Assembly (NCBI GenBank): GCA_946965045.2
Contig: OX337234.1
Span: 310,001 to 374,000, forward strand
Length of the DNA: 64,000 bases
From: Epithemia pelagica
Taxonomy: Eukaryota > Protista > Bacillariophyta
Direction of reading: 5' to 3'
The notes beneath the pieces were generated by a model, which was not told the DNA's origin, ran no database searches, and saw only the letters and a program-made list of their open reading frames with translations. The position numbers and the translations under genes were made by a program. Below are positions 6,306 to 61,783 of this stretch, one piece after another. Position 1 is the first letter of the stretch. The number at the start of each line of letters is the position of its first letter.

Positions 6306-6777
6306 AGCAGACTCTTTGGTTGTGTGCGTTGTGCTCGTTTGTGGATGCAGATGATTCCTGCTTCTTTCTTACACAGCATCATCGACCGCGCAACCAAAGA
6401 ACAACCTACGTCTCTCTCTGCTAGATCGTGGATCATCTCCTTGGAAGTGCTCCGTCACACTGCGTGTTATGTCATCCTCTGTTATCATTCTTATCGGTGG
6501 GAGGACGAGAGAAGTTTCCAGAAACAGTGTCCATTCCAGCTCATCCTCCTCCTCTTTGATCTTGGATAGAATAATACCCTTGGGACACCGAGGGGGGTGG
6601 CAAGCACTTGTGCAATCAAACTGTAACCACAACAACAACAACCCAACAAGACCCGAACAAAGAAAGAGAGTCGCCCATTGATTGGCCAGAAGAGAACGAG
6701 AACCCTTTTGTGTGTTCACCGTTGTCTCTCTCTTTTTCTCAGTACTACAAAACAAAAACCACAACCACCACCGCACC

Positions 6778-9700
6778 ATGTCGTCATCGTCGTCGTCGTC
6801 CCAAGCAACCACCACCACCACGACAAGGAGCTCACCACCACCTTCTTCTCCTCCTCCTTCTTCTCATGGTCCTCGCCAACGGCGTGTCTTTACCAAGGCC
6901 GACTTGGCCGTTTTGGACTTGGTCCAACATCCCATTCACATTTTTGATGTCCAACACAAGCTCATGTGGTGGGCCAATCATGCCGCCATTCAAACCTTGT
7001 GGCAGGCGAGCAGTTTGGAGGAATTGCTGGCGCGCGATTTTGGATCCGACATGAGCTTGGCCACCGAACGACGCTTGCAAGAATACCTTCGACGCTTTCA
7101 ACAACACGAAGCAGAAGAAGCAGCACAACCAGAAGACGAATCCACGAGTCGTAGTACTAGCAAAACAACAACGACAGTCATTCGCGATCAATGGACCTTT
7201 TATCCCAACAATGGACAATATCAAGTCACGGCCCAATTGTCCCTCTCTCCCATTTACATTCAAAATGATGACGATCCAAATCAAGAGCCTTATATGGCAC
7301 TGTTGAATGAATCGGATTTGCATTCCTTGCTCGTGCAACCCAACCAAGAAGCACCACAACAAGAAGCACCACAACCGCAAGAAGCACAATGGACTGCGAT
7401 GCAGGGTGAGTCACCATCCTCCACCCTACCCACAACCACAGCCGAGGAGGACGATCACAATCCTAGTACTACGACTACTACTTCCAGTGTTGGTTCCACT
7501 CCTACGACTTGTTGTAGCCCAAAAGACGAGACCCCGCAGCAAGTCGTGGCCGCCCAAGGCTTGCGCGGTGTGGAACTGCTGCGGCATTTGCCCGTGGCCG
7601 TGTCGCAATTTACCGTGCAAGGCCGGCTCATGGATCAAAATCCTCAAGCCCAACATTGGTTTGGAGATATCCCGGACGACAATAGCAACCCAAACCAAAC
7701 ATTTGAATCGGACTGGCATGGCCGCTTTGTCTGTCCCGAGTTGGCCCAGCAAGTCTTGCAAGCCGTTCAACAAGGACGCGAGACGCAAGTCGAAGCCCAA
7801 CAGTATTATTGGACGACTACGACTACTAGTAATAGTACGGAGGACGACACTTCCGTATCCCCCAAACACTCACAACCTCAACGAGTCCGATCCAAGGGAT
7901 GGTTTGCCTTGGAGGTCCGACCCTGGCAAGATCCCGTCACTCTTCAACCCGTCCTCTTGTACAGTGCCGTGGACGTCACTCAAGTTCGACAGGCCCAGGA
8001 AGCGGCTCAACACGCCAATGCCGAAAAATCTCAACTCTTGGCCGTTTTGGCGCATGAAATCAAGACACCCTTGCATCAAATGGTGGGCTTTATCGACCTC
8101 TTGCTCGATAGCAGTAGCAGCAGCAGTACCAATCACACCAATGACAACACTGCGGCAAGTTTCAACCGCGTGTCCAGTCCGTCCTCAGCATCCGCATCGC
8201 TCCAATCGTCCAAACTCCAACGAAGAAGTACGCATGGTTCCATGAACGACTTGCTCTTGGCGGCAGCCACCGCTGCTGCCGCAACTTCTTCCTCCTCCTC
8301 CACAACAAATTCCTTGCAGTCCGAATCCGCCGACCAGTTGCCCTTGGTTCCTCGTCCCGAACCTTCGTCGTCGTCGGTCTTGTCGGAGGAACAATTGGAA
8401 TTTGTCCAGTGTTTGCAAACCAGTTCCGTCTCCTTAATGACCATTATCAATCATGTGCTTGAATTTACCAAGTTGGAAGCGGGACAAGTCGAACTGCAAG
8501 AGGTAGGTACTTGCTGCCAGCGTTGGCAGGATGCTAGAGCAACGACATGTGTGTGGGGACCTTGTCTCATTCTGCTACTGGTTGCCTTTTATGTGTGTGT
8601 TCCTTGTGTTTTGAAAAAACCGATACCAATAGATCCCCTTTGATCCACGGGGTGTTTGCGAAGGTTGCATGGAAGTCGCACGATCCATGGCGGATAAGAA
8701 GGGTTTGGCCCTCCATTTGCACCATGACTCAACAACAACGCCATTACCACCACAACTCCACAGCGACGACCAAGCCTCCATGAAGAGTGCCGACCACCGG
8801 CAGTCCTCCCGCCGAAAAAGTCTAATGCCCAATGGTGTCCTGGGAGATCCCAACCGGATACGACAAATACTCTTGAACCTCTTATCCAATGCCATTAAAT
8901 TTACCGACCAGGGCAGCATTCGCTTGACGGTTCGGACCCTGTCCTACGAAACCGACCACAACCAGCAGCAGCAACAACAACAAGTCCTCGAATTTGTCGT
9001 TCAAGATACCGGCATTGGGATTCGTCCCCAAGATGTCACTCACATTTTCAAAAAGTATACGCACGCTCCCTCTCATGACAGTGTAGCCATGGAATCGGGT
9101 GGAACGGGTTTGGGATTGAGTATTTGTCATACCTTGGCCGAGGCCATGAATGGGACATTGACGGTCGACAGTGAATGGAAGGTGGGCTCCACGTTCACCT
9201 TGCGTATCCCCGTACGCATGGACCGAGGTCCGACTCCTCCTCTGGTCATGGAGGATAAGGCGAGTGCCTATGGTCCGGAGGAGGAACAGCCATTCCAACC
9301 ACAGCAATCCTCATCACCGCCCACCCAAAAGTCAACTTCGTTGTTGCGGCGCGAACCACAACAACAACAACGTCCTCTACGTATATTGGTTGTGGAAGAC
9401 AACAAAATGAATCAAAAATTGATTCGCGCCATGTTATCACGAGCTCTTTCCAGTAGGGACACGATTACGATTGTGGACAATGGGCAAATGGCAGTCCATG
9501 AATTGCAACGACTGCGTCCTTCGCCAGCACCCGGTGCTGCACAGGACGACAACAACATCGACGACATGTCGTCGTCGTGTCCGTATGATTTGGTCTTTAT
9601 GGACATTCAAATGCCCGTTCTCAATGGGTTGGATGCCACCCATCAAATCCGAACCGCGTTGGGGTGGAGCCCCGAGGACTTGACCATTGTCGGAGTCACG

Positions 9701-9841
9701 GCCAGTTTTCAAACCGCCGACCGGCAGCTGTATGTGGCCGCTGGAATGAACAATTGCATTGGCAAACCCGTACGATTTCACGTTCTCCAAAGCATTGTGC
9801 AACAAGTGCGACAGGAGCGAAACGAGAAACAAGATATATAG
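6778..9841 (+). CDS. Hybrid sensor histidine kinase (2 PAS-like + HisKA + HATPase_c + receiver), 2 exons: join(6778..8502,8633..9841)
   Basis: H-box LAVLAHEIKTPLHQMVGFIDLL; N-box GDPNRIRQILLNLLSNAIKFT; DTGIGI; GGTGLGLSIC; receiver ILVVEDNKMNQ / LVFMDIQMPVLNG / IGKP. GTAGGT donor at 8503 and AATAG acceptor ending at 8632 join ..ELQE|IPFDPRGVCEGCMEV.. in frame (130 bp intron). ATG at 6778. Confidence 0.93.
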
Positions 9842-10202
9842 CGATGCTCGATCGAAGCCAGACCAATGATCCTGCATTGTCAGGGGTATTTGTGGAACAG
9901 TGAACGTGGAGAGTGCTCGGCTCTGCACCTCCATGGTGGTGGCAGTCGCGTACCTCTGTTTCTTCCATACGGATTGGTATGTGCCCGTCTCAGAGTCGGA
10001 AGAAAAAGGTGCGTCCATTTCCATTCGGAGTGCATACTCTATACACTCCTTCGGAGCGAACCAAAAGCTCGCCAATACAGAGTCTCCGGTGAGAGAAAAC
10101 CGCAGCGGAGGCTGTGTGGGACGTTTCCTCGCTTCATACTCCACAACATTGTGACAGCTCTTGTGGCCAGGTACCAGTTTCATTATTATTATCATCCCAA
10201 CC

Positions 10203-11390
10203 ATGTGGATGTTTCGCAACCTCCGCTTTCGTCGACGACGACAACCACGAGAACAGCAAGAAGAGCGGAATGGCAGAGACCAAGTCAGTCGAGTACGTCA
10301 TGGTACTAGTGGGAAGCGCAAACAAGAGATCCAAAAGACAAGCGATCCTGAGGGCAATCCGGATTTGGCATTGTTACCGACAGGAAGTTCGGGTGATACA
10401 GGGGACGAAACAACGACGAGTACGGTGCCAGGTTTGAGCCATTCGAGTAACAGTTCGAGCCGAGACCACGACAGTGGTTCCGTTCGGGGAGAAGAAGACG
10501 TTTCATCCCATTTCTCTTCTCAACGGCCTGTTCCGAATCCAATTGTACACACCAGCCACTCGTCTGCACCACAGCATGCTGCCACGCCCGAGTACCGTCT
10601 TGGAGGCCGACCGCCGCGGTATCCGGCCAAGGTCCCGTCTCGTCGTTCCTCAACTCACGTGGACCAGCATTCGTTTGGTTTGTTTCCTGTTCCATTGAGA
10701 AACAAACAAGCCTTGTTCGATCAGTCCTTGTACGAAGAGGACGACGAAGATTCGGACGATGAAGATTCAGAAGAAGACTACCCAGACAGTGCTTCCGACG
10801 AAGATATGGAAATGGATCGTACGACGCTGGCCGTGGCTAATTTTTCCTACCAGAGCACCCAGAAGGATCGTTTGTCCACTCCGCGGTACCACCCTCCTCC
10901 TCCTACGACGTCTTCGCGTCTACCAAGAACTGCACCCGGTCAATTGGATGCCTTTGTGCAACGACACCATCGTCCTCCCAAATTTCGCGATGACGTGGAC
11001 GATGAGGATGCCGTATCGGTCCGGAGTGCCGCCGAATTGGCCGCCGCTTGGAAACTCAAGGCCTGGGCCAAGGAACACGATTCCTTGGCCTTGGGTGCCG
11101 CCGTAGCTCGTGCCGCAGCAGAAGCCGAGTGGGATGGCAACCACTCCGTGTCGTCCAGAAGCACCAGAAGTAGTCGTGGCCCATCCATGAGGAATCGTCC
11201 CACCACAACGACTCCCAAATCCATCTTGTCGTCGTCACCGTCGTGTGGTGTTGGCAGTGCCGGCCACACGACTCCAACCCACCCTTCCTACTATTACTAC
11301 TCTTGTATGGACCAACCGTCCTTGGGAATACGACAAAATTATGGTCAACACCCTCCCGAAACTGTCGAATCGTCATTTATGGAAGTGTAA
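10203..11390 (+). CDS. Hypothetical, largely disordered protein
   Basis: Long single open frame from ATG 10203. It has acidic and Ser/Thr tracts and one ordered-looking helical patch (AAELAAAWKLKAWAKEHDSLALGAAVARAAAEAEW). No family recognised. Confidence 0.65.
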   Translation: MWMFRNLRFRRRRQPREQQEERNGRDQVSRVRHGTSGKRKQEIQKTSDPEGNPDLALLPTGSSGDTGDETTTSTVPGLSHSSNSSSRDHDSGSVRGEEDVSSHFSSQRPVPNPIVHTSHSSAPQHAATPEYRLGGRPPRYPAKVPSRRSSTHVDQHSFGLFPVPLRNKQALFDQSLYEEDDEDSDDEDSEEDYPDSASDEDMEMDRTTLAVANFSYQSTQKDRLSTPRYHPPPPTTSSRLPRTAPGQLDAFVQRHHRPPKFRDDVDDEDAVSVRSAAELAAAWKLKAWAKEHDSLALGAAVARAAAEAEWDGNHSVSSRSTRSSRGPSMRNRPTTTTPKSILSSSPSCGVGSAGHTTPTHPSYYYYSCMDQPSLGIRQNYGQHPPETVESSFMEV

Positions 11391-11767
11391 GCAATGTACG
11401 AGAGTGCAAACGATGGTGTCTGTACGAGTCTATGGAGTGTGTAGTACCTAGTCAATATAGTGTGGATCGTCAAACCATGTCAGTGTAGACCTTTTGGATT
11501 GGGAATCGAAAACGTTTCCTATTAGAAACAACCGAATCTCGAAATGCCAAGGGTATATAACTATATACCCTGCGTATGGTTTTCTATAGAAAAGAAAGTG
11601 GTTGGTGGTGTGGTTGTTTTTTGGTGTAGCTCGATTCAGACCCGACCGAAACACTCATTTGAAATGTCCACGTTCTATTCCGATTGCACATCAATTGAGA
11701 CATACCAATAGAATGTATTCTGGAGTAGTGGCGGTACCATGCGTACTGTTTTTCTTGTCGTCTGTTC

Positions 11768-12751
11768 CTACACGGCCTTGCCAATCAAAAACAAGACGGC
11801 ATAATCTTGTTTGGTCGTACCGGCAATGGCCGGCATGGGAGCTCCTGGTCGCACGGGAAAATCGGCCACATTGGCTTGTTGTGGCGTGGCTACTGCTGCT
11901 GTTTCGGACGACGACGACGAAAGAATGGGTTGATAGCGGGCCGATCGACAGGGCAAATGCGTGACATCTCCCAGTACTGCACCCTCGTCCAAGGACCAGG
12001 TCCCATCAAGTCGCACCGTCAAACCCGTCATGACTTCTCGACCACCCGTAACCAAATACCGACCGGCCGGTATGGGAAAGGTGGGCGATTCCATAATCAA
12101 GCCATGTTCTTCAATCCACCAATCCTGGGGGTTGTACTGCCAATTGCCAATGGGTGCCACGTAGTCGCGTTGGACCAATTGCTGGTCAAAATTTTTCAAA
12201 TAGACTCCGCGAGGTCCCGGATCTTGACGCCAATAGCCCCAATCGTGGGCATTGGTACCGGACGATGCCGTGGGCGATCCCAAGGCGGCAATGTATTGCG
12301 TCGTGGGCAACCGGACAAAGCCAGCCGGGGTATACAAGGTGATGCGATACAATTGCCACGACGCGACACCCATGGCGCCCAACAAACCGGTGGCCACCAC
12401 ATTGATGAGAGTATTGCGCCGTTGTTGCGATTCGACCGCTTGCGATCGTTCTTCCATCCACAGCGGATCGAATTGTGCGGCTGGTTCGACAGTCTCTGTT
12501 GGATTCTCTTGCAGGGAGTCCGTGTTGTCATGGTCGCTGTTGCTGCTAGCTTGACGGCGGCTGGAGGATGGCTCCTTCTGCCACAAGCCTGTAGAAGTGG
12601 AAGAGAATGCGGTGCAGACTGGATGCAGGCGTCCAAGAGTCGGTGTGGTGGACAAGGACAATGGCCGCCTTGAAGTCAAACCAAAGGCAGCAACCATAGT
12701 ATAAGGGGTCCACGAAATTAGAAGTAGTAGCAGTGTCACCATCATCATCAT
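11768..12751 (-). CDS. Putative plastid (possibly thylakoid-lumen) protein of unknown function
   Basis: Signal peptide ending VAA|FG (diatom ASAFAP-like), Ser/Thr/Arg-rich transit region, then RRNTLINVVATGLLG (twin-Arg plus hydrophobic stretch). The rest is a compact Trp/Gly/Pro-rich globular domain (QYIAALG...DPGPRGV...WWIEEHGLIME...VTHLPCRSARY). Confidence 0.75.
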   Translation of the reverse strand: MMMMVTLLLLLISWTPYTMVAAFGLTSRRPLSLSTTPTLGRLHPVCTAFSSTSTGLWQKEPSSSRRQASSNSDHDNTDSLQENPTETVEPAAQFDPLWMEERSQAVESQQRRNTLINVVATGLLGAMGVASWQLYRITLYTPAGFVRLPTTQYIAALGSPTASSGTNAHDWGYWRQDPGPRGVYLKNFDQQLVQRDYVAPIGNWQYNPQDWWIEEHGLIMESPTFPIPAGRYLVTGGREVMTGLTVRLDGTWSLDEGAVLGDVTHLPCRSARYQPILSSSSSETAAVATPQQANVADFPVRPGAPMPAIAGTTKQDYAVLFLIGKAV

Positions 12752-13643
12752 GGTAGGGAAAAGAAATGATCAATCCAGAAACTTTTTGAAAAGAAAACAG
12801 TTTTGGCTGGTGTGCGCACTCTAGATTTTCTTTCGTTGGACAAGAGGACCTTTGTGCATCAACCAACGCCAATAAGTCCAGATCGCTTCTGGTTTCTGGT
12901 TCGACCGAGCAGAGCGAGAGCTATAATGCCGATGATCGATGTGTGCGCGCCATGGTCGCTCTCGGCAAAACACAAAAAAAACCACGTCACTGTGGCGTAC
13001 CAATGCTAAATGCTAAGCAATGCTATGTGGATATAGATTTTGCTTAGCCAATCAATATTAGCTCTGGTAGCTAAGGGACTATGAACGGATGGTCCTACGG
13101 CCTAGAAGGTATGGTGGCCTCCTCAGCACCGTCAAAAATCTTTCATCTCCGCTTCTTCTGCACAATCAATCACCACCTTCCGCAGGGAGAGATGTTCGCC
13201 ATCAGCTGCATCTCAGCTATCGAAAATCTTATGGTCTCTCGTGAGATGAGGAAGCAATCACTACTTTGTAGTGAGAGATGTTACATGGTGGCATATAGAG
13301 CTTCGTACAGGATTTGTGGAAAATGGATCATTGGAGCTCTAGCTCTAGAAGAAACAGAAAAAACGGGAATAAGGCTCTCTTTATCCTATGGTAGACAGAA
13401 CAAGAGCACAGCTGCTCGACCTAAAAGGAAAACGTTGAGTGTCCCTTCTATCTTCGGCAACTCGCATCATGATACCTTTCGATCCCTGCTACCAGTCCAC
13501 AAAGACAATATCCAGGATGGGAAACAATCGACCCAGAACACTACAGTCATGACCATAAAAGTTTTCATATCCTGGTGACCAGCACCCCGTCACCTCAAAC
13601 CCTCTTGAAACAGGGTCCGAATGAACATGAGTGTATCGTGATG

Positions 13644-14768
13644 TTAGCTTGGAACTTTGCCCATCTCCAACAAACGTGCAAAGAGCCAACTCTTCTTGTC
13701 CACAAGTGACAGTGTTTCACACGAAATTCTGTTTCCACTACTTTGAGTAATCACAGCAAGAGTATTCGACAAGGATATCATACCACAAATATCCCTCCTT
13801 ACTGTCAAGTCCGGAAGCTCCCACAACATGTTTCTCACAGTATCCAAAACCTCCACAGCATATACGGAAAAAAAGCTGTCATCGCATCCTCCTGCAACAA
13901 CAAGACAGGAACCTACTTGGACTGCAAATAATCGAGCTCTCGGTTTTTTCAGAATGAGTTCCTTGTGGACGGTCCAGGACTTTGTGGACAATGCAACACT
14001 GGATGTGGCAGTGGGAGCATCCAACCAGTCATCAAACTCCAAGTATTCGACCGATTCCGGGCAACTGGCGATTCCCCACCCACCAACAGCATAGATGCGC
14101 GAACGAACCACAGCCATTGCAAGTCCGCTTCGACCTTCTTTCAACGAGGGCCCAGATACGACCGAATACGGGTTCCCAGATGCGGTATCCAAGATATCAA
14201 CCGATGATACACAATTATCGAGGATAGAACTGCTTCCGCCCGCCACCACAATAAATCGGTCAGAAACAGAAACAGCGGCGCAGCTTAATCGTTTACTCGT
14301 CAAACGACAATTCAACATCTTCCATCCATTGGAGCTGTTACTGCAAGAAGAGGAAGACGATGATGAATGAAGTAAATCGCCGACATGGATACGTTCAATA
14401 GTATCCAAGGCAGTGTCGCCGTTGTATCCACCAATGACGTAAACAGCGCCATTGCATACCACAGAAGCAAGATTTCTTCGTTTTTCTTGTAAAGGCGGTC
14501 CAGTTTGCCATCTTAAATCGCCAACGTTCATGAGACTAACCAAATTTGTTGCACCATCAGAAATAGGGTCCGGCCATCCTCCCGACAACACCAACAACTT
14601 GTCGCGGTTCATGGCTGGATGATGAACGACAACCGACGCATGGCCCCAAACATACCGCCCCAAGAGTGGAGTCCAATTTTCACTAGATGGCCTCCACTGC
14701 GGTTCCATTTCGTCCTTTCTGTCGGCAAAGACCAATCCCGACAAGACAGCTTGTTCCTGGATCGTCAT
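13644..14768 (-). CDS. Kelch-repeat beta-propeller protein, array copy 1
   Basis: Repeats with GG doublets and W (VYVIGGYNG, IVVAGG, IYAVGGW, LVVAGG; RWQTGPPLQEKR) and the family C-terminus LVDKKSWLFARLLEMGKVPS. ATG at 14768 chosen by alignment to paralogues. Confidence 0.9.
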   Translation of the reverse strand: MTIQEQAVLSGLVFADRKDEMEPQWRPSSENWTPLLGRYVWGHASVVVHHPAMNRDKLLVLSGGWPDPISDGATNLVSLMNVGDLRWQTGPPLQEKRRNLASVVCNGAVYVIGGYNGDTALDTIERIHVGDLLHSSSSSSSCSNSSNGWKMLNCRLTSKRLSCAAVSVSDRFIVVAGGSSSILDNCVSSVDILDTASGNPYSVVSGPSLKEGRSGLAMAVVRSRIYAVGGWGIASCPESVEYLEFDDWLDAPTATSSVALSTKSWTVHKELILKKPRARLFAVQVGSCLVVAGGCDDSFFSVYAVEVLDTVRNMLWELPDLTVRRDICGMISLSNTLAVITQSSGNRISCETLSLVDKKSWLFARLLEMGKVPS

Positions 14769-52895: not shown

Positions 52896-54142
52896 TGCGT
52901 TTTTTTGTGGAACAGGTCAAAAAGGTCGTTATTCTACGAGAAGCGCTTTCTTTTTTGTGGCATAAAGACACGTTTTGGTGGGTGCACATTGTTCCCTCCA
53001 AGGAACAAGATGTGTTATGGATGTGTTTCGACTGACTGTTTCGTTCTCGTTCCTGGAATCTTGTTGGCGTTGATTACGACTGATTCGTTGTCGTTATCCA
53101 TCGAACACAATTCGACCGATCCAAATCCATCATACATGCTATGCTGGGAAAGAAAGTCGCCGATTGGAAGGGAAAGAAGCGGAGCGTTGAGAAGACACAT
53201 TTCGACGGATCAGACAAGAGGTGCTGATTCGCACTGTATCCCAGGCAGGCGTGACATGTGCTCGTTGAACTGTCCGAATGAGTCGACTGCCTTTTCAGCG
53301 GACAACGGCGCTTGATTCGTCTCCGAGGGCATTTCGGGGGACGACCTGGACCGAACATATCCACAGCTTTGCCACCTCCGAAATCCACCATGATGGCCTT
53401 CTGAGCGCCGTCAAATACATCTTCCATCTCGGTTGCTTCTTCGGCACAATCAATAACCACCCCGACAGGGACATGTTCGCCACCAACGCATCTCGACCAA
53501 CGTCTTTACCACCACCCTTTCCAAAAACACTTTTATTCTTGCTCCCTTTTCCACCACCACAGTCATGATTGCTTCTTCTTTTTCCTCCCTCCTCCTCCTT
53601 CGTTCCAACAGTAGCCAAAACGGTCCTGGGTTACCTTCCAACAAGTGCTAGAATAAGAATGGTTGGCATCGATGCCCTGTAGACTTTCATGATGATGTCC
53701 CGTTTGTTTCACTCTTGTTGGGAAATCTACCTACCAGGTTGTGTTTCACAAGAATAAATGTCTGATGGCTCGTCACCGCAAGTAGTGATTGTCCCTAACG
53801 CCTCGTTCGAAGGGGTCTTGTTGCTTTGTTCATTCAGGTATTGAACATTGGTGCCATCGCCTTCTCAATTCTTTTGCTACAATGATCCATCGTCCATACC
53901 ATTTGTCCACCATATAGAGAATATGCAATCACAGCTCTCGTCGTCATCAGCAATCTTGCAGGTATCTACCAGCCAAGAACACATTCGTCTCTGTCCCGTG
54001 CTGCGCATACCGCCATGGTCATTCGTCATGCATCATTCCGCGTTTTTGTTGCGGTGGGGCGTGGGGAATTGGGGATGCCCCCACCGGATAGGAGGACAGA
54101 CAGACACCAGCCGCATGATCATCACCCTGCCGGCGTGCGCAT

Positions 54143-54156
54143 CAGGGTGTGGAAGT
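54143..54156 (+). repeat. Left TIR of hAT element
   Basis: CAGGGTGTGGAAGT preceded by GTGCGCAT. Confidence 0.95.
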
Positions 54157-54560
54157 TGGAAAATCAGCCATTAGACTTAACTTCCCAACTAATAATTCAT
54201 TAGACAGTTTACTGTGATGCGACTTGTACCCACTAGTTAATGCAACATGTATGATTAACTTAACTTAAACTAATCAAATCACAAAACCACGATACAGAAT
54301 GAACTTGCAACTAATAGTCTAACACGACTAAGGTACTAACTTGACTAGATTAAATATGGTTCCAAAACCTGCAACTTAACTTAGACTAACTTTGAAAGTC
54401 GTAGTTTCTTTTCTGAGTATGCAACTAGACTAAACAAGTCCAAGTTGCAACTTTGCCCCTTGTAATTAAACTTCATCCCTCTGTCACCTCCATAGTTACA
54501 ACTATTAGTTGCAACTTCTTTGTTGTCGTAGTCACAAACAACAACTTTTATTCAGAGGAA
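54157..54560. repeat. AT-rich left subterminal region with repeated AACTT/GACTT/TTGCAACT motifs
   Basis: Many copies of AACTTAAC, (A)GTTGCAACT and AGACT(A/T), including the palindrome AAGTTGCAACTT at 54442-54453. Similar motifs recur at ~60700-61050. Confidence 0.7.
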
Positions 54561-54849
54561 CCATTCACTCTTATCTGTTTCTACGTATTTATTCACACTC
54601 TTCCTGCACATATTTACCAATATCACTCCCAGAGGAGTAGAACGTTCACGACTCACGACAGAGGTTCAACCAACACTCACAACTCACAACTCTTAACCTC
54701 TCAACATTCACCAATCCACTGTCACCTGTCACCTTTACCTCTGTTCCTTTCCATCAACGACACAACCTTCAGTTTTCCTGCCCTTCTCATTTCTCATTGC
54801 CACTATTATTTCCCCATCCTCAACCCCATGCATCTTATATTCAAGTACA

Positions 54850-56691
54850 ATGGAAGCATCAGATGACCGTACCATCAACCTCGATGTGACTTGTCACCAA
54901 GTCATCACTGTGACCCATATTCCAATGTCGTTCATGACCATGATGCTAGAGGACTCAACTTTGTTAACCACTCCCTTGGAAAAGGCGACACAAGACTTGG
55001 CAATGGAGAACATAAAAGATGTGGTGTTGCTGTGGCTTACCCGGTACAATGGAAGTCTGCACTACCAACAAGTCGACTATCCATCCAACACAAGCCACCC
55101 TTGTTTATCTCCCAGTCGCATGTCATTCGAAAGCTTACTGAACACTGTCTGTCGAATAGTGTTTACGGGTCTGTATTCCCAAGAAGATGACTCATTCCAA
55201 GTCACATACGAGATGAACCCCCCCACCGACGACCTCCCCTTCATCTCCATTGAAGGAAAATGCCGACCAATATTTTCTTTGCCTTCCTCCAATGGTCTCA
55301 GAGCTTTTCAAAAATTCAATGCCAATTACCATCAGCAAAACAACTACACTAAACTTTCCGTGGAATGGAATCTTCTAACCTGGATGACCCGACACAATGC
55401 CAGAATCCAGGTTAGAAATTCCTTTGACCTACGGACAGAGTGTCCTATTTGTATTAGTCCAAGCATCGACATCGTTGTTGAGGACATTGTTGCGCATACT
55501 AAGAAGAGCACGAAGGAGGACGACCGTTACTCAATGAAACTGGATACAACAACGTCCCCTCCTCCTATTGATACAAGTCCTCCATCAACTCCAGTTGCCA
55601 AAGCTTCTCAATCTACCATGGGCCCAAATAGCAACAACGCTTCTACTTCTGTCACCCATGAATATTGGGCTTCTTCTCCTGTCATTGATGAATATTGGAC
55701 CAAGCGACAATTTTCCCCCACTGCCCATGTCTTGACTCGGCAAAGAAAAACTGTTCTCTGCCATGCTTTATTGCAATCATGTTCCGCCAAGGAACAGATA
55801 GTCTATGGCGACAGACACATGCCTGGGACACCTGCAATTACCAAACCTGTCATGACCAGAATGTTTCGCCCTTCCATCCCCATTAGAAACCAATCCACAA
55901 TTGATTCCCGGCTGTTTTTACTTGATATTCTTTCCCATTTACGTCGGTATTTCCTTCAGTCTGGTTTGGAAGCCCCCAGAGACACATGGTCCGAATGGAT
56001 TACCAACAATATGTCGGAATATGAAGACTCTGACCCAGCCTTCATGTGTCTCATTGTTATCTTGATGAGCTCGGCCACATCAGATCAAAGTCTCTCTCAA
56101 GTGATCCCTCGCTTATTCCAATCGGGCATCACTAGTGCACAAGGAACAATTGAAGTGTCTACATATTTTGGGATGGATGTTTTCTGTAGTTTGTTTGCAG
56201 AAACAGGACGGTATCGTGTCAATGCGGAACGCATAGTCAACGCCGCGGACTATTTCGTCCAGCGACACAAAGGTCGCATTCCTAAAGACATTTCCCTTAC
56301 TGAGCTTATGACCTTACCTGGAATTGGCCACAAGACGGGAACAATCATTCTACAAACGGCATTTGGCCGGACGGAAGGAATTCCCTCAGATATTCATGTT
56401 ATCCGATCAACTAAGGTTCTCAATTGGACAGAGTCTCATATCAATGACGGCATGGAATGCTCTTTGAACCTTCAATCATGGCTTCCTAAAGAACGATGGG
56501 AGGAAATCAATCCTTTATTTGGTTCTCTAGGACAACTACTTAACAAACCACAGACCAGAAGCAAGTGCCAAGAACAAATGGAGTCTTTTATTGTGGCTCA
56601 CTCTCATGACAAATCCGAATCTAAATCTCCAGCGAATCTTCGCCATCTCAAGTATTTCTTTCTGCAGTTGATAAAAGAATATACTAAATGA
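54850..56691 (+). CDS. Endonuclease III (Nth)-like HhH-GPD DNA glycosylase/AP lyase with a ~390 aa uncharacterised N-terminal region (transposon cargo)
   Basis: FMCLIVILMSSATSDQ; HhH ELMTLPGIGHKTG with catalytic Lys (56332-56334); GIPSDIHVIR with catalytic Asp (56389-56391); WLPKERWEEINPLFGSLGQ. Intact 613 aa single ORF with no C-terminal 4Fe-4S Cys motif. Confidence 0.9.
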   Translation: MEASDDRTINLDVTCHQVITVTHIPMSFMTMMLEDSTLLTTPLEKATQDLAMENIKDVVLLWLTRYNGSLHYQQVDYPSNTSHPCLSPSRMSFESLLNTVCRIVFTGLYSQEDDSFQVTYEMNPPTDDLPFISIEGKCRPIFSLPSSNGLRAFQKFNANYHQQNNYTKLSVEWNLLTWMTRHNARIQVRNSFDLRTECPICISPSIDIVVEDIVAHTKKSTKEDDRYSMKLDTTTSPPPIDTSPPSTPVAKASQSTMGPNSNNASTSVTHEYWASSPVIDEYWTKRQFSPTAHVLTRQRKTVLCHALLQSCSAKEQIVYGDRHMPGTPAITKPVMTRMFRPSIPIRNQSTIDSRLFLLDILSHLRRYFLQSGLEAPRDTWSEWITNNMSEYEDSDPAFMCLIVILMSSATSDQSLSQVIPRLFQSGITSAQGTIEVSTYFGMDVFCSLFAETGRYRVNAERIVNAADYFVQRHKGRIPKDISLTELMTLPGIGHKTGTIILQTAFGRTEGIPSDIHVIRSTKVLNWTESHINDGMECSLNLQSWLPKERWEEINPLFGSLGQLLNKPQTRSKCQEQMESFIVAHSHDKSESKSPANLRHLKYFFLQLIKEYTK

Positions 56692-56793
56692 CTGTCAATA
56701 TATTATATTTACCAAAATGCACTGCGATTATGGATGTATAGTTTCCGTGACGTTTCTTCCATTGTCACCTTCAGTGACGTTCGTGGTCGGAGA

Positions 56794-59700
56794 TCAACTG
56801 GTACCGTCATTGTCCGCACTTGAGACTTCCTTCTCTGCAAGTCTTGGGCTTCTTCTCGTTGGCGAGTCGTTTGGGGTTGGGGGTGGTTTGCGATTGTCTT
56901 TCTTGCGTGGTGTTCTAACCACAGTTCTTGCGAGTGCCTCAGAGAGTGAATTCTGCTTCGTCCGTTTCCTTCCTTTTTGAATAGTTGAAGAGGCTTTACG
57001 TTTCCCACTATCTCCTTTCGTGCCTTCATTGGCATTTGCAACGGGCAGACTAGCAACAGTCTTCTCCAACGCGGTTTGTTGAATGAGTTCATTCTTTCTT
57101 TCCTGGATGGCTTCTTTTAACGCCGTGTCAGAATCTTCCTTGTCTTCGTCATCGTCGTAAGGAGCAACAACTTTTCGATCCAAAGCCTCTAGTTGGTCTT
57201 CATCTCGTTGATCGTCTACCAGATCAACCAATTCGACGTCGTCCCATGTCGCATCGCTCACAACTGTCTTCTTATCAACCTTTTTGACCGACTTGAACTT
57301 GTAACTTGTTTCCGCCTCTATGCCGTGGGCACCAATAGTTCCGGACAGTTCGTAGAGTTCCAGCTTCGACGTTGCTCGTAGTACCGTTTCCATCCGAGTC
57401 ATATCGGATTGTGTCGGTGTGGCTTTTTCCAGTGGGACAACAGGAACTTGTGTTCCTGCTGCCGGGGTGCGTTGTTGTGCGGTCTGTTGTACCTGACTGA
57501 CTTCTTCCCCTTTAGATTCCTGGCTGAGATCTATCACCTTCTTTGCTTGGCGGCCACTGGCTGCCTTTTTTTCGTCGGAGGTCGCGCCTTGTTTGAGTAG
57601 CTCTTCATTCTTGACAATCTCAGAGCGCACCTCCCTTGTAATACTTTCCATAGTGCGCATTTCAAAGTTCTTGTCTAGTTGGCGTCTCATTAAGGGATTC
57701 CTATCCATGAACGACGACCGAGAGAACACGCGTTCCTGGAATGCGTTTGTCGCAGGTTTCGATATCCAAATCAAGGCACTAGGAAAGAGTTTGGGGAATA
57801 GCATCTTGTTGTCGGACCACCATTTCAAGACGTCAAAATATTTCCCAACGACATGGAAATAGTGTTCCGTACAGGCCAACTTGAATTCTTGTTGTTTTTC
57901 AGGGTTCCACGAACCAGATAGTTTCAGAAATGCGGCAGTGGGATACTGGCGAATCAAGTCCTCCCAGGATCCATGGACAACGTTCTCGCAAAATTCGAGA
58001 TAGCGTCCGAACTGTTCATCACACATCTTGTATAGCTTGGCTCTATCAACTTGGTCATCTGTACTGGTACTTGTCGCCGTCGCCTCCATTAGTGCAGCAT
58101 TTTCTTTCTCCTTGGTGATGCGATGTGTCTTGAAGATGTTAAAGCAGTCCATTACATTCGAGACAGCTTTTGGGACTGAAGACTCTTCCTCTTTGTCCTC
58201 GATGATCTCCACAGGTGTACTTTCCTTTTGTTGTTCACGTTCCTGCTGATTCGACTTGGATTGGGGATTGGTGCCATTCTTCTTTGGCTGCGAGAACTTG
58301 CGGACAATGTCCATCACAAATTCTTTCCGAATCCGTTTAAGACTCTCATCGTCGTAAACATTTATGGTTTTCAGTATGTTGGGACCATAAGATGCAAGGA
58401 AAGGATGTCCACACATGGCGTGTTCAGCGTGGGAGTCATGGCCTTCCTCAATGTAGTTTGTATATTCCACAAGTACTCGCTCGATCAACAATTGACTCTT
58501 TTCTGACAATTTGTCGTATGTTACAATGTCTCGATACGATTGAAGCTTGGCGATGGTGAGACTATCATCCCATGGGCGTGCATTAGGCCCAGTAACAGTC
58601 AACACGGGCACTCCCTTATCTTTCATAACTTCCACACAATGCTTACTGGTGAAGATTTCCAGCAATGAACAAGCCGATGCAGAAGGGTCGTCAACTTGGA
58701 GTGACATGGAGACTTGTTTGAGTGGGGCCAAGATTCCCTCGAATTCGGCCAAGAGCTGCCAGTCCTCTTCAGAGGGATAATGTTTAATGAATTCGTCGTC
58801 CTTGTACTCAAATTGCTCTTTTGCATACATATCCGTTACAAATTTGTTCCGGAATAGGTCATGAAAGGTAATGATGCAGCCTCCAACACGGGTTGTATTT
58901 GGCATAGAGACTTTGATGACCTTCCTCCCATGTTTTAGGGCGTAGGAACGTATCTTTTCAAATCTTTTGGCACGCGAACTCATCATCCATGCTGCAAATT
59001 TGAAGAATTTTCTATAAACAGTCATGAATTCCTCGTTACTGTCCACCACTTCGCCTTTTTTTTTCCGGACTGCCAGACCTGTGGAGTGTTTCAAGATCAG
59101 TTCGGCCCTGTGCATGTCGCACTTGCCGCCTGTCTTATTACCCACTATATACTTTCCAGCCAACACGGCGGAGTTCGTGTTGTCATTCACGGAGGCAGAG
59201 AGGTCTTGTTGCGTAAAGCCGACAGCGTTGAGGATTGATGAGGTGTGGTCGGCTACTTGTTTTGCTGTATGACCCTTTGTTGAGCAAAGGCCAATCGGGA
59301 GTCTGTAAGATTTACAGTTCCGAGGATCGGTGAACATCAAACAAACCCCAAGGACATCCTTGTCATTTCCCTGCCAGATGTCGTGTGTTATCGTAGAAAA
59401 GGCGATGGGTTTGTTGCATAGATCATGGTACGCTTGTCGTACGTTTTCTCCAAGTTCCGTAACGGTCTTGAGAAAATCATTGTAGGACTCCAATCTCATC
59501 CGAGTGATTGCTTTGTTGCTTATGGAACAGTCCTTTTCCTTGAGCTTTGGGGCGTTGGCAATTGCACACTTAAGAAGATCTCTAAACGATTCCTTCTCAA
59601 CAGTTGATGCCGGGAAACCACAGTCATTCACGAACTTATAAATTGACTGATGAAACATTACTCTGGCATCTTGTTTGCTAACCATTGTGCCAGAATACAT

Positions 59701-59940
59701 GGAAATGGGTTGTTGAGTAGGGTCGGTTGCAACAGAGGCAGTATCTTCCACGACTTCGGGGTGGTATTTACCAAAGTGTGTGCTGATGTTGGACGAAAGG
59801 CCTCTGCCAAGACCAAGGAGACATTTGTCGAGACTAACAGTCGGGTCGTTGAAGCAATGTGGACAAACAACAAGCTTCTTTACAATGGAATGATAGCCAT
59901 CGTTCATTTCTTTGTCTTCATCAGAAGCTGACTCTAACAA
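56794..59940 (-). CDS. hAT transposase (BED-type finger, DDE RNase H-like core, hAT dimerisation domain)
   Basis: CPHC...SNISTHFGKYH (BED-type); TITHDIW (D1); SVNDNTNSA (D2); CDMH (CxxH); VLKWWSDNKMLFPKL...PATNAFQERVFS (dimerisation domain, catalytic E). The track start at 59940 is TTG, so the real start is probably upstream. Confidence 0.93.
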   Translation of the reverse strand: MLESASDEDKEMNDGYHSIVKKLVVCPHCFNDPTVSLDKCLLGLGRGLSSNISTHFGKYHPEVVEDTASVATDPTQQPISMYSGTMVSKQDARVMFHQSIYKFVNDCGFPASTVEKESFRDLLKCAIANAPKLKEKDCSISNKAITRMRLESYNDFLKTVTELGENVRQAYHDLCNKPIAFSTITHDIWQGNDKDVLGVCLMFTDPRNCKSYRLPIGLCSTKGHTAKQVADHTSSILNAVGFTQQDLSASVNDNTNSAVLAGKYIVGNKTGGKCDMHRAELILKHSTGLAVRKKKGEVVDSNEEFMTVYRKFFKFAAWMMSSRAKRFEKIRSYALKHGRKVIKVSMPNTTRVGGCIITFHDLFRNKFVTDMYAKEQFEYKDDEFIKHYPSEEDWQLLAEFEGILAPLKQVSMSLQVDDPSASACSLLEIFTSKHCVEVMKDKGVPVLTVTGPNARPWDDSLTIAKLQSYRDIVTYDKLSEKSQLLIERVLVEYTNYIEEGHDSHAEHAMCGHPFLASYGPNILKTINVYDDESLKRIRKEFVMDIVRKFSQPKKNGTNPQSKSNQQEREQQKESTPVEIIEDKEEESSVPKAVSNVMDCFNIFKTHRITKEKENAALMEATATSTSTDDQVDRAKLYKMCDEQFGRYLEFCENVVHGSWEDLIRQYPTAAFLKLSGSWNPEKQQEFKLACTEHYFHVVGKYFDVLKWWSDNKMLFPKLFPSALIWISKPATNAFQERVFSRSSFMDRNPLMRRQLDKNFEMRTMESITREVRSEIVKNEELLKQGATSDEKKAASGRQAKKVIDLSQESKGEEVSQVQQTAQQRTPAAGTQVPVVPLEKATPTQSDMTRMETVLRATSKLELYELSGTIGAHGIEAETSYKFKSVKKVDKKTVVSDATWDDVELVDLVDDQRDEDQLEALDRKVVAPYDDDEDKEDSDTALKEAIQERKNELIQQTALEKTVASLPVANANEGTKGDSGKRKASSTIQKGRKRTKQNSLSEALARTVVRTPRKKDNRKPPPTPNDSPTRRSPRLAEKEVSSADNDGTS

Positions 59941-59955
59941 TTGCAGACACGAAAA

Positions 59956-60459
59956 TTAACCTGGCATTTTCCCCAAATTGACAGCGGGGTTTGATTTTAA
60001 GGTCTTCTTCGTGCTGGTCAATTTCTTGAAGTTCAGGTAACGAACTTTTCCAAAGAACGAATTTTGGAAATTTCGAAAGAGCTTCTTCGGAGGTGGACAA
60101 AACGAGACATATGATTTCTCTTGTTTGATTTCATCCTTTCGGCTTTGTGTCAAGGGTCCCTCGTCCGTAGGAGCAGGAGCAGCAACTTGTTGAGAGTTGT
60201 CTTCATTGTTGGCTGTTGTAGGAGGCGCCTGGTTTTCATTTTCTCTTTCATTGGTTGTTGTCGGTGGGTTCGTGGGTTCTTCATTGTTGTCGTCACCTCC
60301 AGTTGCTGACGATAGTCGAGCTTCTTTGGAGGATTGAGATGACTGCTGTTGATTCTTTCTTTGGGGAGCCATGGCATACATGAATGTCGCTGATGAAAGA
60401 CTGGAAACAGCAGGGGAGTTCAAATCTACTTCAATGTCCTCGATTGGCAACAAAGACAT
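59956..60459 (-). CDS. Probable N-terminal segment/first exon of the hAT transposase
   Basis: Same strand and frame as the transposase ORF. Only a TAA (59958-59956) plus 5 sense codons separate them. Disordered N-terminus followed by a basic/aromatic segment. Confidence 0.65.
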   Translation of the reverse strand: MSLLPIEDIEVDLNSPAVSSLSSATFMYAMAPQRKNQQQSSQSSKEARLSSATGGDDNNEEPTNPPTTTNERENENQAPPTTANNEDNSQQVAAPAPTDEGPLTQSRKDEIKQEKSYVSFCPPPKKLFRNFQNSFFGKVRYLNFKKLTSTKKTLKSNPAVNLGKMPG

Positions 60460-61052
60460 GTGCTTTCAACCAGAGATTGGTTGTTTGATTCCGACAGTGT
60501 CAACTGGAAAAATCACACCTCATTCGTGTGCTGTAACGCTGCAACAAGCCACAGCAGAGGTGAAGAGATTGTGTTTTGGGTTCAGTGTTAAGAGGTAAGA
60601 AAGAGGTAAGGGGCCAGTACCGATTATATCTTGTTGACTGTGTTTGTTACTGTAGGATAGTGCGAAGTGACCAAGTGTCAAGTGTCGACAGTCGACACTG
60701 ACACTAGTTGCAATGAAGTAAAATTACAACTTGATTTGGAGAATTTAGTTCTAATCTTGAGACTTGCAATTAGACTTCAGACTTCGAGTCACTAAGTGGA
60801 GACATGTAACTTGATTGAACTATGTGAGAAAATTGCAACTTGGATAATTACATTAGTGTGTGCCAATGTTCCGGTAATAAGAGCTTGTAAATAACTAAGT
60901 TGGATGGGTCCAAGTCAAGTTCGATGAAAAATGTGAGCAATTTGACTTTGTGAAAAAAGTTCGTTTGAGAAAGGCTAGTAATGTGATTTGATTTGTGAAA
61001 TTATGGTGAAAAAGTTCAAAAGTTGCAGAACTTAGAAAATTTTTCGCTAGTG

Positions 61053-61066
61053 ACTTCCACACCCTG
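61053..61066 (-). repeat. Right TIR of hAT element
   Basis: ACTTCCACACCCTG followed by GTGCGCAT. Confidence 0.95.
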
Positions 61067-61783
61067 GTGCGCATGGAGGGTCGTTTGGGGGGAGTGTCGG
61101 GCGCGCAACGGCTCACAAATTCCAAACCCACAGCCCATCAAACCAAAAAAAGTGGCCATGGCGTCGGTGCCGTCCTCGAAATGGTTCTGTCATCCCCCCA
61201 TAAAAGAGAACATGAAGAAGATGAAGGAGAAGAAGGCGATTGCAGTGGTACGAATGGCAGAACAACCACAACAACAACAATGGCAACCGATCGAGTTCAA
61301 CGGTGGATTGTTGTGGGTCTGTTGTGTTTGTGGAGTGCCTCGATTCCCTTTCGGTATTCGTACGGAACAACAAGCACTAGGATGATTCGTACTACCACCA
61401 CACTCACTCTCACCCAATCACCACCACCACAACGACGGCAGTTGCAACCATGGTCGTCATCACCAACAACACCTCCATCCTCCTGTGGCGGCTAAGCTCA
61501 AGCAGCAAGATGAATCTCTATACATTATGGGAGAGGAAACGATATCACAGTTCCTCGGCCCAAACGGAAAACCGGCTGGCCAATGTAGGCCCCTGTCTAT
61601 CTTTGGCATATCGCATTCGATCTCTGCTGCCAGAACACAGAGACCATATCTACGATGGGACACAGTCGAACCAAAACACGACAGTCATGACAATAAAAGT
61701 ATTCATTTCCTGGCGACCAAGACCCGTCTCCACAGAACCTGTTGACACAGGGTCCGAAAGAAAAGCATGAGTGTGTTGTGCTG

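What the first reader, a model, noticed from the sequence alone, without database searches (positions are those of the whole stretch)
54143..61066. hAT transposon carrying an intact base-excision DNA glycosylase: candidate TE-encoded anti-silencing or self-repair system
Seen: exact TIRs and an exact 8 bp TSD bracket two convergent genes whose stop codons lie 102 bp apart, a hAT transposase and a 613 aa HhH-GPD glycosylase with intact catalytic Lys and Asp. The glycosylase is therefore inside the mobile unit. Established: HhH-GPD enzymes include Nth (oxidised pyrimidines), MBD4/MIG (T:G from 5mC deamination) and DEMETER/ROS1 (5mC excision). Diatom TEs are CG-methylated. Some TEs carry epigenetic counter-defence genes (VANC in Arabidopsis VANDAL elements; TET/JBP with fungal KDZ elements). 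I do not know of hAT elements with a glycosylase cargo. Inference: the enzyme may remove 5mC or its deamination/oxidation products from the element, or its AP-lyase activity may help process hairpinned excision ends or target DNA.
Basis: partly seen in the sequence, partly recalled or inferred. Interest (0 to 1): 0.93.

Follow-up and report, generated by a model that had tools for sequence, protein, structure and literature searches.

The report
hAT transposon with its own DNA glycosylase
This is one recently inserted copy of an old family of cut-and-paste (hAT) transposons, probably in a diatom, that carry beside the transposase their own endonuclease III-like base-excision enzyme; I found no description of such a cargo, and it may let the element remove silencing or damage marks from DNA.

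Summary
Exact 14-bp TIRs (CAGGGTGTGGAAGT) and an exact 8-bp TSD (GTGCGCAT) bracket a 6,924-bp element. It holds a 613-aa Nth-like glycosylase and a convergent hAT transposase 102 bp apart. DNA runs of the same organism contain the precise empty site with one TSD copy at about half depth, so the insertion is polymorphic and recent.

The glycosylase is not a one-off capture. Ten further elements were examined: eight in one genome assembly, one on a sediment-metagenome contig and one on a Logan contig. All ten have both genes, and nine have them inside TIRs. All eight genome-assembly elements have their own TSD.

Glycosylase and transposase trees have the same topology. dS is saturated and dN/dS is about 0.13 for both genes. 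The catalytic Lys and Asp are kept in every complete family member. The family forms one clade apart from cellular Nth, lacks the Fe-S loop, and has a duplicated N-terminal module of unknown fold.

This copy's transposase carries a private nonsense codon. Intact sister copies exist. A related glycosylase-less lineage in another genome shows the enzyme is dispensable in cis.

Function is untested. The likeliest role is anti-silencing or base editing for the element's benefit (about 0.35). The scan had already found this family elsewhere in this genome.

The parts
54135..54142 (.). left copy of the 8-bp target site duplication GTGCGCAT
   Evidence: The empty-site contig in X1 and X2 keeps a single copy.
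54143..54156 (+). left terminal inverted repeat CAGGGTGTGGAAGT
   Evidence: The same 14-mer ends the elements in L001, L002, L003, L006 and L011.
54157..54849 (+). left subterminal region, presumed glycosylase promoter, with TTGCAAC repeats
   Evidence: Five of the window's 27 TTGCAAC matches lie at 54305-54515. Binding and promoter roles are inferred.
54850..56691 (+). glycosylase gene, 613 aa, intact
54862..55533 (+). N-terminal domain (aa 5-228): two homologous repeats of about 110 aa, unknown fold
   Evidence: AF2 pLDDT 85.8. hhalign repeat 1 against repeat 2 gives 96.8%, E 2.8e-10. No Pfam or fold match.
55975..56574 (+). Nth-like HhH-GPD domain (aa 376-575) with K495 (56332-56334) and D514 (56389-56391); no Fe-S loop
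56692..56793 (.). 102-bp spacer between the two convergent stop codons
56794..60459 (-). hAT transposase frame (1,221 codons), broken by one in-frame TAA at 59956-59958
   Evidence: D 59380-59382, D 59182-59184, C/H 59119-59121 and 59110-59112, E 57733-57735. TRV in place of TRW at 58885-58887.
60460..61052 (-). right subterminal region, presumed transposase promoter, with TTGCAAC repeats
   Evidence: Function is inferred.
61053..61066 (-). right terminal inverted repeat
61067..61074 (.). right copy of the TSD GTGCGCAT

Best explanation
SHOWN. This is one copy of a two-gene hAT transposon family. One end drives a DDE transposase. The other end drives a convergent Nth-type bifunctional glycosylase/AP-lyase that lacks the Fe-S cluster and carries a duplicated N-terminal module unique to the family. 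The glycosylase was acquired once, long ago, and has been inherited together with the transposase. It is under purifying selection and keeps its catalytic Lys and Asp. The window copy inserted recently: the empty allele still segregates. It has since lost its transposase to a private nonsense mutation, so it now depends on intact sister copies such as L011.

INFERRED. The enzyme is made from the element and removes a modified base from DNA. Candidates are 5-methylcytosine or an oxidised or deaminated derivative of it. Host base-excision repair then restores an unmodified C. This would counter methylation-based silencing of the family, much as TET/JBP genes in fungal transposons and VANC in VANDAL elements are thought to. 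The N-terminal repeats would supply targeting, to the element's DNA or to the transposase.

CONFIDENCE. About 0.95 for the architecture and co-inheritance. About 0.7 for catalytic competence. About 0.35 for the anti-silencing mechanism; that last figure is the one given as the confidence of this statement as a whole.
For: The element's boundaries and the empty site are established. Both genes lie inside TIRs with their own exact or near-exact TSDs in L001, L002, L003 inner, L003 outer, L004, L006 and L011. In L010, a sediment metagenome contig, both genes lie inside TIRs but the TSD is cut off by the contig end; in L009, a Logan contig, both genes are present. The glycosylase and transposase trees of 8 paired elements have identical unrooted topologies. 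dS is saturated and dN/dS is about 0.13 for both genes. K and D motifs are present in every family representative with a complete domain. The family has about 41 representatives at 50% identity and forms a single clade with SH-aLRT 99, apart from 93 cellular Nth-like representatives. The fold matches NTHL1 and endonuclease III with TM 0.73-0.76. Intact copies exist. The glycosylase-less relative L008 has a transposase cluster of 205 members, so the enzyme is an accessory and not part of the cut-and-paste chemistry. CpG transitions are mildly enriched among private substitutions, at 3.3 times the non-CpG rate, which fits CpG methylation of the copies. Precedent exists for TE-borne demethylation genes, including hAT7 elements with TET/JBP (PMC12730594).
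Against: There is no expression, methylation or biochemical data; no RNA run was available. By sequence and fold the enzyme is closest to Nth/NTHL1, which excise oxidised pyrimidines. It is not close to DEMETER/ROS1 or MBD4, and it lacks the Fe-S cluster that DME/ROS1 have. CpG is still somewhat depleted in the elements (observed/expected 0.69-0.75 against 0.85-0.96 in the flanks), and CpG transitions still occur. So neither methylation nor deamination damage is fully prevented. The host was not identified independently, so its methylation system is assumed.
Confidence: 0.35

Rival explanations
1. Transposition cofactor. The glycosylase-like protein works with the transposase at the element's ends or at the target. 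Its HhH and N-terminal repeats could bind the subterminal repeats or the transposase. Its base-flipping or AP-lyase chemistry could help to process donor or target DNA. It would play the part that the Myb-like second protein plays in PIF/Harbinger.
For: The two genes are strictly co-inherited, with matching trees and similar selective constraint. The N-terminal module is family-specific and duplicated. The whole transposase clade has Val where Hermes has the hairpin-stabilising Trp of CPTRWNS.
Against: The related L008 lineage has the same TIR type, an exact 8-bp TSD and a transposase cluster of 205 members, but no trace of a glycosylase in cis. It also has TRV. No known step of hAT transposition needs a glycosylase (established knowledge of Hermes and Ac). 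The retained catalytic residues point to an enzyme and not merely an architectural protein.
Confidence: 0.2
2. Self-repair. The enzyme removes oxidised or deaminated pyrimidines (thymine glycol, 5-OH-C, U or T opposite G) and so slows mutational decay of heavily methylated or exposed transposon DNA. Alternatively it repairs damage linked to excision and gap filling.
For: Its closest relatives are classical Nth/NTHL1 enzymes. Clusterless Nth homologues such as yeast Ntg1 are active (own knowledge). The intact copy L011 shows 0 CpG transitions in 22 private substitutions, against 8 in 33 in the two transposase-dead copies (Fisher p 0.016, a post hoc comparison).
Against: A diffusible repair enzyme would help the whole genome, not the element, unless it is targeted. 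The host presumably has its own Nth. CpG transitions do accumulate in copies whose glycosylase is intact.
Confidence: 0.2
3. Passenger without function. A host glycosylase gene was captured and is merely carried along.
For: hAT and other DNA transposons do capture host fragments. Private substitutions in young copies look nearly neutral in the glycosylase alone (7 nonsynonymous to 6 synonymous).
Against: ORFs of 543-715 aa remain intact in lineages only 30-54% identical. dN/dS is about 0.13. Catalytic residues are invariant. The tree matches the transposase tree. The clade is separate from cellular Nth.
Confidence: 0.03

Closest known systems
hAT7 and other fungal DNA transposons that encode a TET/JBP dioxygenase (Kojima 2025, PMC12730594; KDZ elements of Iyer et al. 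2014)
   Same: An autonomous DNA transposon, hAT included, carries a DNA-base-modifying enzyme gene inside its TIRs. The gene is kept in several families and is proposed to counter cytosine methylation.
   Different: The enzyme here is a HhH-GPD glycosylase/AP-lyase, not a dioxygenase. The genes are convergent. There is one ancient acquisition with co-diversification, not frequent transfer between superfamilies. The TSD is 8 bp, not 7. The host is probably a diatom, not a fungus.
Endonuclease III / NTHL1 / yeast Ntg1 (Nth branch of the HhH-GPD superfamily)
   Same: It has the same fold, the HhH-GPD motif with the nucleophilic Lys and the catalytic Asp, and it scores best against this branch by sequence and structure. 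Like Ntg1 (own knowledge) it has no Fe-S cluster.
   Different: It forms a separate clade. It has a 390-aa N-terminal extension with a duplicated module of unknown fold. It is encoded in a transposon. Its substrate is unknown.
DEMETER/ROS1 5-methylcytosine glycosylases of plants
   Same: They are bifunctional HhH-GPD enzymes with the same Lys/Asp chemistry, and their biological role would match the anti-silencing reading.
   Different: DME/ROS1 have an Fe-S cluster and flanking domains A and B. None of these was found here, and no DME/ROS1 structure appears among the sequence or fold matches.
Ac, Hermes, hobo, Tol2 (classical one-gene hAT elements)
   Same: Shared features are the 8-bp TSD fitting nTnnnnAn, short TIRs starting CAG, the DDE and CxxH residues, the C-terminal hAT dimerisation domain and a BED-like finger.
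   Different: This family has a second conserved gene. Its transposase is about twice as long (about 1,220-1,360 aa) with low-complexity tails. It has Val in place of the conserved Trp of the TRW(NS) motif.
VANC anti-silencing proteins of Arabidopsis VANDAL (Mutator-like) elements
   Same: Both are a transposon-borne accessory gene thought to act against the host's DNA methylation of the element.
   Different: VANC is not an enzyme of base excision, the transposon superfamily differs, and function is demonstrated for VANC but not here.

Membership tests
hAT superfamily of DNA transposons | 8-bp target site duplication | tested here: met
   GTGCGCAT is exact at both ends. Eight further insertions have their own TSD, seven exact and one with a 1-base ambiguity. 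The empty site holds one copy.
hAT superfamily of DNA transposons | short terminal inverted repeats (about 10-25 bp, usually starting CAG or TAG) | tested here: met
   Exact 14-bp CAGGGTGTGGAAGT. It is conserved across lineages and genomes as CAGGGTnnnGAAGT.
hAT superfamily of DNA transposons | DDE catalytic triad with CxxH motif and C-terminal hAT dimerisation domain | tested here: met
   PF05699 scores 28.6 bits. Alignment to Hermes D180, D248, CxxH and E572. All conserved in the 36 clade sequences wherever the motif region is present (a few truncated sequences lack it).
hAT superfamily of DNA transposons | conserved Trp (Hermes W319, TRWNS motif) | tested here: not met
   The family has PNxTRVxG about 75 residues after CxxH. 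Hermes CPTRWNST is seen. Val (one Ile) is found in all 36 sequences. The residue correspondence is by motif and spacing only, not by a scored alignment.
hAT superfamily of DNA transposons | N-terminal BED zinc finger | tested here: inconclusive
   CPHC...HFGKYH (CxxC-x26-HxxxxH) lies at residues 199-233 of the frame, but there is no Pfam zf-BED hit.
hAT superfamily of DNA transposons | target preference nTnnnnAn | tested here: met
   T at position 2 in 7 of 9 TSDs and A at position 7 in 8 of 9.
Endonuclease III (Nth) family, HhH-GPD superfamily | HhH-GPD fold | tested here: met
   Pfam 26.6 bits against a cut-off of 26.2. NTHL1 at E 1e-16. Foldseek matches NTHL1 and EndoIII with TM by target 0.73-0.76.
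Endonuclease III (Nth) family, HhH-GPD superfamily | nucleophilic Lys after the hairpin and catalytic Asp about 18-20 residues later (bifunctional type) | tested here: met
   K495 and D514 are invariant in alignment A1. Both motifs are present in all representatives with a complete domain.
Endonuclease III (Nth) family, HhH-GPD superfamily | [4Fe-4S] cluster loop C-x6-C-x2-C-x5-C | tested here: not met
   Absent from the window protein and from the full-length family members P0001-P0007 and P0064-P0082. It is present in 40 of 107 non-family hits. Clusterless active members such as yeast Ntg1 exist (own knowledge).
Endonuclease III (Nth) family, HhH-GPD superfamily | excision of oxidised pyrimidines and AP-lyase activity | not testable with these tools
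   This needs biochemistry.
DEMETER/ROS1 5mC glycosylases | Fe-S cluster and conserved domains A and B flanking a split glycosylase domain | tested here: not met
   There is no Fe-S motif. The N-terminal 390 aa have no Pfam or fold match. No DME/ROS1 entry appears among the PDB matches.
Transposon-borne anti-silencing systems (TET/JBP-bearing transposons, VANC) | accessory gene kept inside the TIRs across diverged lineages of the transposon | tested here: met
   Eleven elements in at least three data sources, with congruent trees.
Transposon-borne anti-silencing systems (TET/JBP-bearing transposons, VANC) | loss of DNA methylation or silencing at the element when the gene is expressed | not testable with these tools
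   No RNA or methylation data could be reached. The runs found are DNA and Hi-C.

The most novel reading that the evidence does not exclude
The family encodes a new lineage of DNA demethylase. It would be an Nth-derived, cluster-less glycosylase that excises 5-methylcytosine, or an oxidised form of it, and is aimed at the transposon by its duplicated N-terminal module. That would be the first glycosylase-based anti-silencing weapon of a transposon, and an origin of active 5mC excision independent of plant DEMETER/ROS1.
Probability: 0.25. Interest if true: 0.9.

Novelty: new variant of a known kind. Interest (0 to 1): 0.72.

Why it matters
DNA transposons with enzymatic cargo that acts on DNA bases are rare. 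The only well-described cases are TET/JBP genes in fungal elements. Here a base-excision enzyme has co-evolved with a hAT transposase over a divergence deep enough to saturate synonymous sites, and the family is still moving. That makes a concrete question testable: can a transposon edit or demethylate DNA for its own benefit in a stramenopile alga, where no active demethylase is known? It also offers three practical things. One is a compact, naturally active two-gene hAT system, with an intact copy at L011 and defined TIRs, that could be tested for diatom genetics. Another is a cluster-less Nth enzyme with possibly new specificity. The third is a new protein module of unknown fold.

Tried and rejected
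1. RNA evidence. Both run searches returned only X1-X3. Contig sizes and GATC junctions show these are DNA and Hi-C, so expression could not be tested.

2. The scan of JGI metagenome contigs with the family alignment found nothing.

3. Precise dN/dS. NG86 and YN00 fail because dS is saturated. Only the LWL85 estimates of about 0.13 are given, and they are rough.

4. The N-terminal domain has no match. This covers Pfam on the protein and on 22 relatives, Foldseek against PDB and AFDB clusters, VIA-align wide (best Z 5.6, below the noise level) and the Atlas structure search. Only weak likeness to the diatom domain DUF6824 appeared, with TM no higher than 0.37.

5. The idea that Val replacing the hairpin Trp of the transposase is tied to the glycosylase is rejected. 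The glycosylase-less L008 lineage has Val too.

6. The convergent ORF after the glycosylase on JGI contig L005 could not be confirmed as a transposase tail (E about 0.6).

7. The organism was not identified. The run names are coded, and the Atlas only points to Bacillariophyta for the nearest Nth cluster and for DUF6824.

8. CpG observed/expected and CpG-transition counts are suggestive of methylation only.

9. Five literature searches found no hAT or other transposon with a glycosylase.
Full report
THE OBSERVATION

The element is real and sharply bounded. The 14-mer CAGGGTGTGGAAGT at 54143-54156 is repeated exactly in inverted orientation at 61053-61066. These are the only two exact matches in the 64-kb window. 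Each repeat is flanked on the outside by GTGCGCAT, at 54135-54142 and at 61067-61074.

Inside lie a 613-aa ORF on the + strand (54850-56691) and a long frame on the - strand (60459-56794). Their stop codons are 102 bp apart.

The + ORF reaches the Pfam HhH-GPD threshold (26.6 bits against 26.2). It matches human NTHL1 at E 1e-16 over residues 398-567, with the Lys of LPGIGHK and the Asp of PSDIHV in place.

The - frame has the hAT dimerisation domain. Aligned to Hermes, it shows the two Asp, the CxxH motif and the Glu of the catalytic site.

The transposase frame of this copy carries a single in-frame TAA at 59956-59958 (codon 168). It therefore reads as a 167-aa ORF and a 1,048-aa ORF. The sister copy L001 and the collapsed consensus of all copies have TTA (Leu) at that position, so the stop is private to this copy.

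PROOF OF MOBILITY

Two short-read DNA assemblies of the same organism (X1, X2) were laid on the region. Both contain a contig that runs from the left flank through 54142 and continues directly with the sequence of 61075 onward. The same contig is seen from the right side. This is the empty site with one copy of GTGCGCAT.

The empty-site contig carries two flank SNPs and has about half of the flank depth (about 85-90 of about 165). The insertion is therefore heterozygous or polymorphic.

Depth over the element is roughly 6-12 times the flank depth, which fits a multi-copy family. The tool warns that this depth measure is not a copy number.

X3 is a Hi-C library (GATC junctions). No RNA run was available.

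NOT A ONE-OFF CAPTURE

A protein search found the glycosylase in clusters of 17, 6, 5 and 5 near-identical members at 99, 51, 40 and 34% identity. It also found metagenome relatives.

I fetched the surroundings of representatives. Every glycosylase on a contig with enough downstream sequence (all except the short contigs L005 and L007) is followed, 40-210 bp downstream, by a convergent hAT transposase.

Elements with defined ends, all with both genes inside the TIRs:
- L001: 7313-14210, TSD CTTCTCAC.
- L002: 7340-14083, TSD CTTGTGAT.
- L003 inner: 7467-14392, TSD AGTAGAAT.
- L003 outer: 301-14710, TIR CAGGGTTGTGAAGT, TSD CTCATGAC. The inner element is nested in it, and it has its own glycosylase and transposase.
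- L004: 7588-14231, TSD GTTCAAAC with a 1-base ambiguity.
- L006: 7526-14339, TSD CTCAAAAC.
- L011: 3404-10315, TSD ATTAAAGC.

Starting from the transposase side gave the same picture. A Logan contig (L009) and a sediment-metagenome contig (L010, TIRs CAGGGTTACGAAGT) also carry the convergent pair.

The nine TSDs fit the hAT target consensus nTnnnnAn: T at position 2 in 7 of 9, and A at position 7 in 8 of 9.

CO-INHERITANCE AND SELECTION

Maximum-likelihood trees of the glycosylases and of the transposases from the eight paired elements have the same unrooted topology, with most branches well supported. The topology is ((window, L002), L003 inner), (L004, L006), against L003 outer and (L009, L010). 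This points to one ancient acquisition followed by co-diversification.

Between lineages, synonymous sites are saturated (dS above 2) while dN is 0.29-0.6. The only estimator that converges gives dN/dS of about 0.13 for the glycosylase and 0.12-0.13 for the transposase.

An exhaustive profile search of 1.84 billion representatives found 41 family representatives at E no greater than 1e-30, followed by ordinary Nth-like proteins. About 25 of them are full length. In all representatives with a complete domain the Lys and Asp motifs are kept, and none of the full-length members has the Fe-S motif.

In a domain tree with 93 of the nearest non-family proteins, the 26 family members form one clade (SH-aLRT 99). 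So the gene is neither unique to this copy nor a near copy of a host NTH1.

STATE OF THE WINDOW'S SUBFAMILY

Three copies (window, L001, L011) differ from their consensus by 16, 17 and 22 substitutions, or 0.23-0.32%.
- The window copy has the nonsense codon.
- L001 has a 1-bp deletion in the transposase.
- L011 has both genes intact, with a 1,221-aa transposase and a 613-aa glycosylase, and looks autonomous.

The transposase cluster holds further members of 1,218-1,220 aa. The private substitutions split 7 nonsynonymous to 6 synonymous in the glycosylase and 17 to 13 in the transposase.

THE PROTEINS

AlphaFold2 with a 34-sequence family alignment gives mean pLDDT 80.8. The model has:
- a confident N-terminal domain (residues 5-228);
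- a disordered linker (226-294);
- a helical C-terminal domain whose best PDB matches are NTHL1 and endonuclease III (TM by target 0.73-0.76), ahead of MIG, MutY, MagIII and OGG1.

The N-terminal domain was modelled alone at pLDDT 85.8 and pTM 0.73. It consists of two homologous repeats with strand-strand-helix-helix-strand-helix order (hhalign 96.8%, E 2.8e-10).

That domain has no Pfam match and no convincing fold match. The best Foldseek E is 0.03, the best VIA Z is 5.6, and there is only weak likeness to the diatom domain DUF6824.

The transposases are unusually long (about 1,220-1,360 aa), with a BED-like CxxC...HxxxxH and long low-complexity tails. The whole clade has TRV where Hermes has the TRW of CPTRWNST.

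A GLYCOSYLASE-LESS RELATIVE

In another genome assembly (L008) a transposase of the same clade is 35-36% identical. It also has TRV, and its cluster has 205 members. It sits in a 7,065-bp element with TIRs CAGGGTTTGGAAGT and the exact TSD AGCACCAC.

Neither tblastn nor a full-sensitivity profile search finds any glycosylase remnant there. The 3.3 kb behind the transposase has no long ORF.

On the transposase tree L008 groups with L009 and L010 (support 93/90), which hints at loss. The tree is unrooted, however.

This lineage shows that the clade can multiply without a glycosylase in cis, unless one is supplied in trans. That weighs against an essential role in the transposition chemistry. It also uncouples the Trp-to-Val change from the glycosylase.

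WHAT IT MOST LIKELY DOES

Shown: it is a conserved, selected accessory gene that is very probably catalytically competent as a bifunctional glycosylase/AP-lyase. It belongs to an active hAT family.

Inferred: its benefit to the element. I rank the readings as follows.
- Anti-silencing by excision of 5mC or a derivative: about 0.35. It explains why a selfish element would keep such a gene, and it has precedents in TE-borne TET/JBP (PMC12730594) and VANC.
- Transposition cofactor: about 0.2.
- Repair of oxidised or deaminated bases in the element: about 0.2.
- Functionless passenger: about 0.03.

Indirect signs of CpG methylation are mild. CpG observed/expected is 0.69-0.75 in the elements against 0.85-0.96 in the flanks. 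CpG transitions occur at 3.3 times the non-CpG rate (8 of 55 substitutions, p 0.047).

Against the favoured reading, the enzyme looks like Nth and not like DEMETER/ROS1, and nothing about expression or methylation could be measured.

NOVELTY

Five full-text searches found no transposon described with a DNA glycosylase. The closest described case is hAT7 and other fungal transposons with TET/JBP.

I class this as a new variant of a known kind: a hAT element with a new, conserved enzymatic accessory gene.

The scan had already met this family on other pieces of the same genome. Several follow-up reports reached similar conclusions.

New for this locus and report:
- the empty allele;
- the private nonsense codon;
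- the intact sister copy;
- the identical gene trees;
- the glycosylase-less sister lineage;
- the internal duplication of the N-terminal module.

Noticed in passing
L003:301-14710 (outer) and L003:7467-14392 (inner): One glycosylase-hAT element (TSD AGTAGAAT) is nested inside another, more distant family member. The outer element has TIR CAGGGTTGTGAAGT and TSD CTCATGAC, and its own genes are a 543-aa glycosylase (892-2523) and a 1,283-aa transposase (2576-6427).
   Followed up: partly
L008:6950-14014 (assembly ERZ25042306): A related hAT element has the same TIR type and the exact TSD AGCACCAC. Its transposase cluster has 205 members. It has no glycosylase, and the 3.3 kb behind the transposase lack any long ORF.
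   Followed up: yes
window 58885-58887 (-); all 36 clade transposases: Val (one Ile) stands where Hermes and other hATs have the conserved Trp of the TRW(NS) motif, which stabilises the hairpin intermediate. The change is clade-wide and also occurs in the glycosylase-less lineage.
   Followed up: partly
window element, L001:7313-14210, L011:3404-10315: CpG transitions make up 8 of 33 private substitutions in the two transposase-dead copies but 0 of 22 in the fully intact copy (Fisher p 0.016). The comparison is post hoc and the numbers are small.
   Followed up: partly
window 61078-61130 and the left flank near 54120-54142: X1 and X2 hold a further contig with a diverged version of the joined flanks (...CACCCCGCCGGCGCGCGCATCGGGGG...). 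It looks like a paralogous or third-haplotype empty site in this repeat-rich kelch region.
   Followed up: no
window 58628-58641 (-) and L001:11779-11792: A TIR-like 14-mer (CATTGTGTGGAAGT, 2 mismatches) lies inside the transposase ORF and is kept in the sister copy. It may be chance or an internal binding site.
   Followed up: no
window 56692-56793: Only 102 bp separate the convergent stop codons (40-210 bp in other lineages). The 3' ends of the two transcripts probably overlap, which could produce double-stranded RNA and self-regulation by small RNAs.
   Followed up: no
window 56794-60459 (-); L002, L003, L004, L006 transposases: The transposases are about twice the usual hAT length (about 1,220-1,360 aa). 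They have about 190 residues before the BED-like finger and an acidic/basic low-complexity tail of about 300 residues.
   Followed up: no
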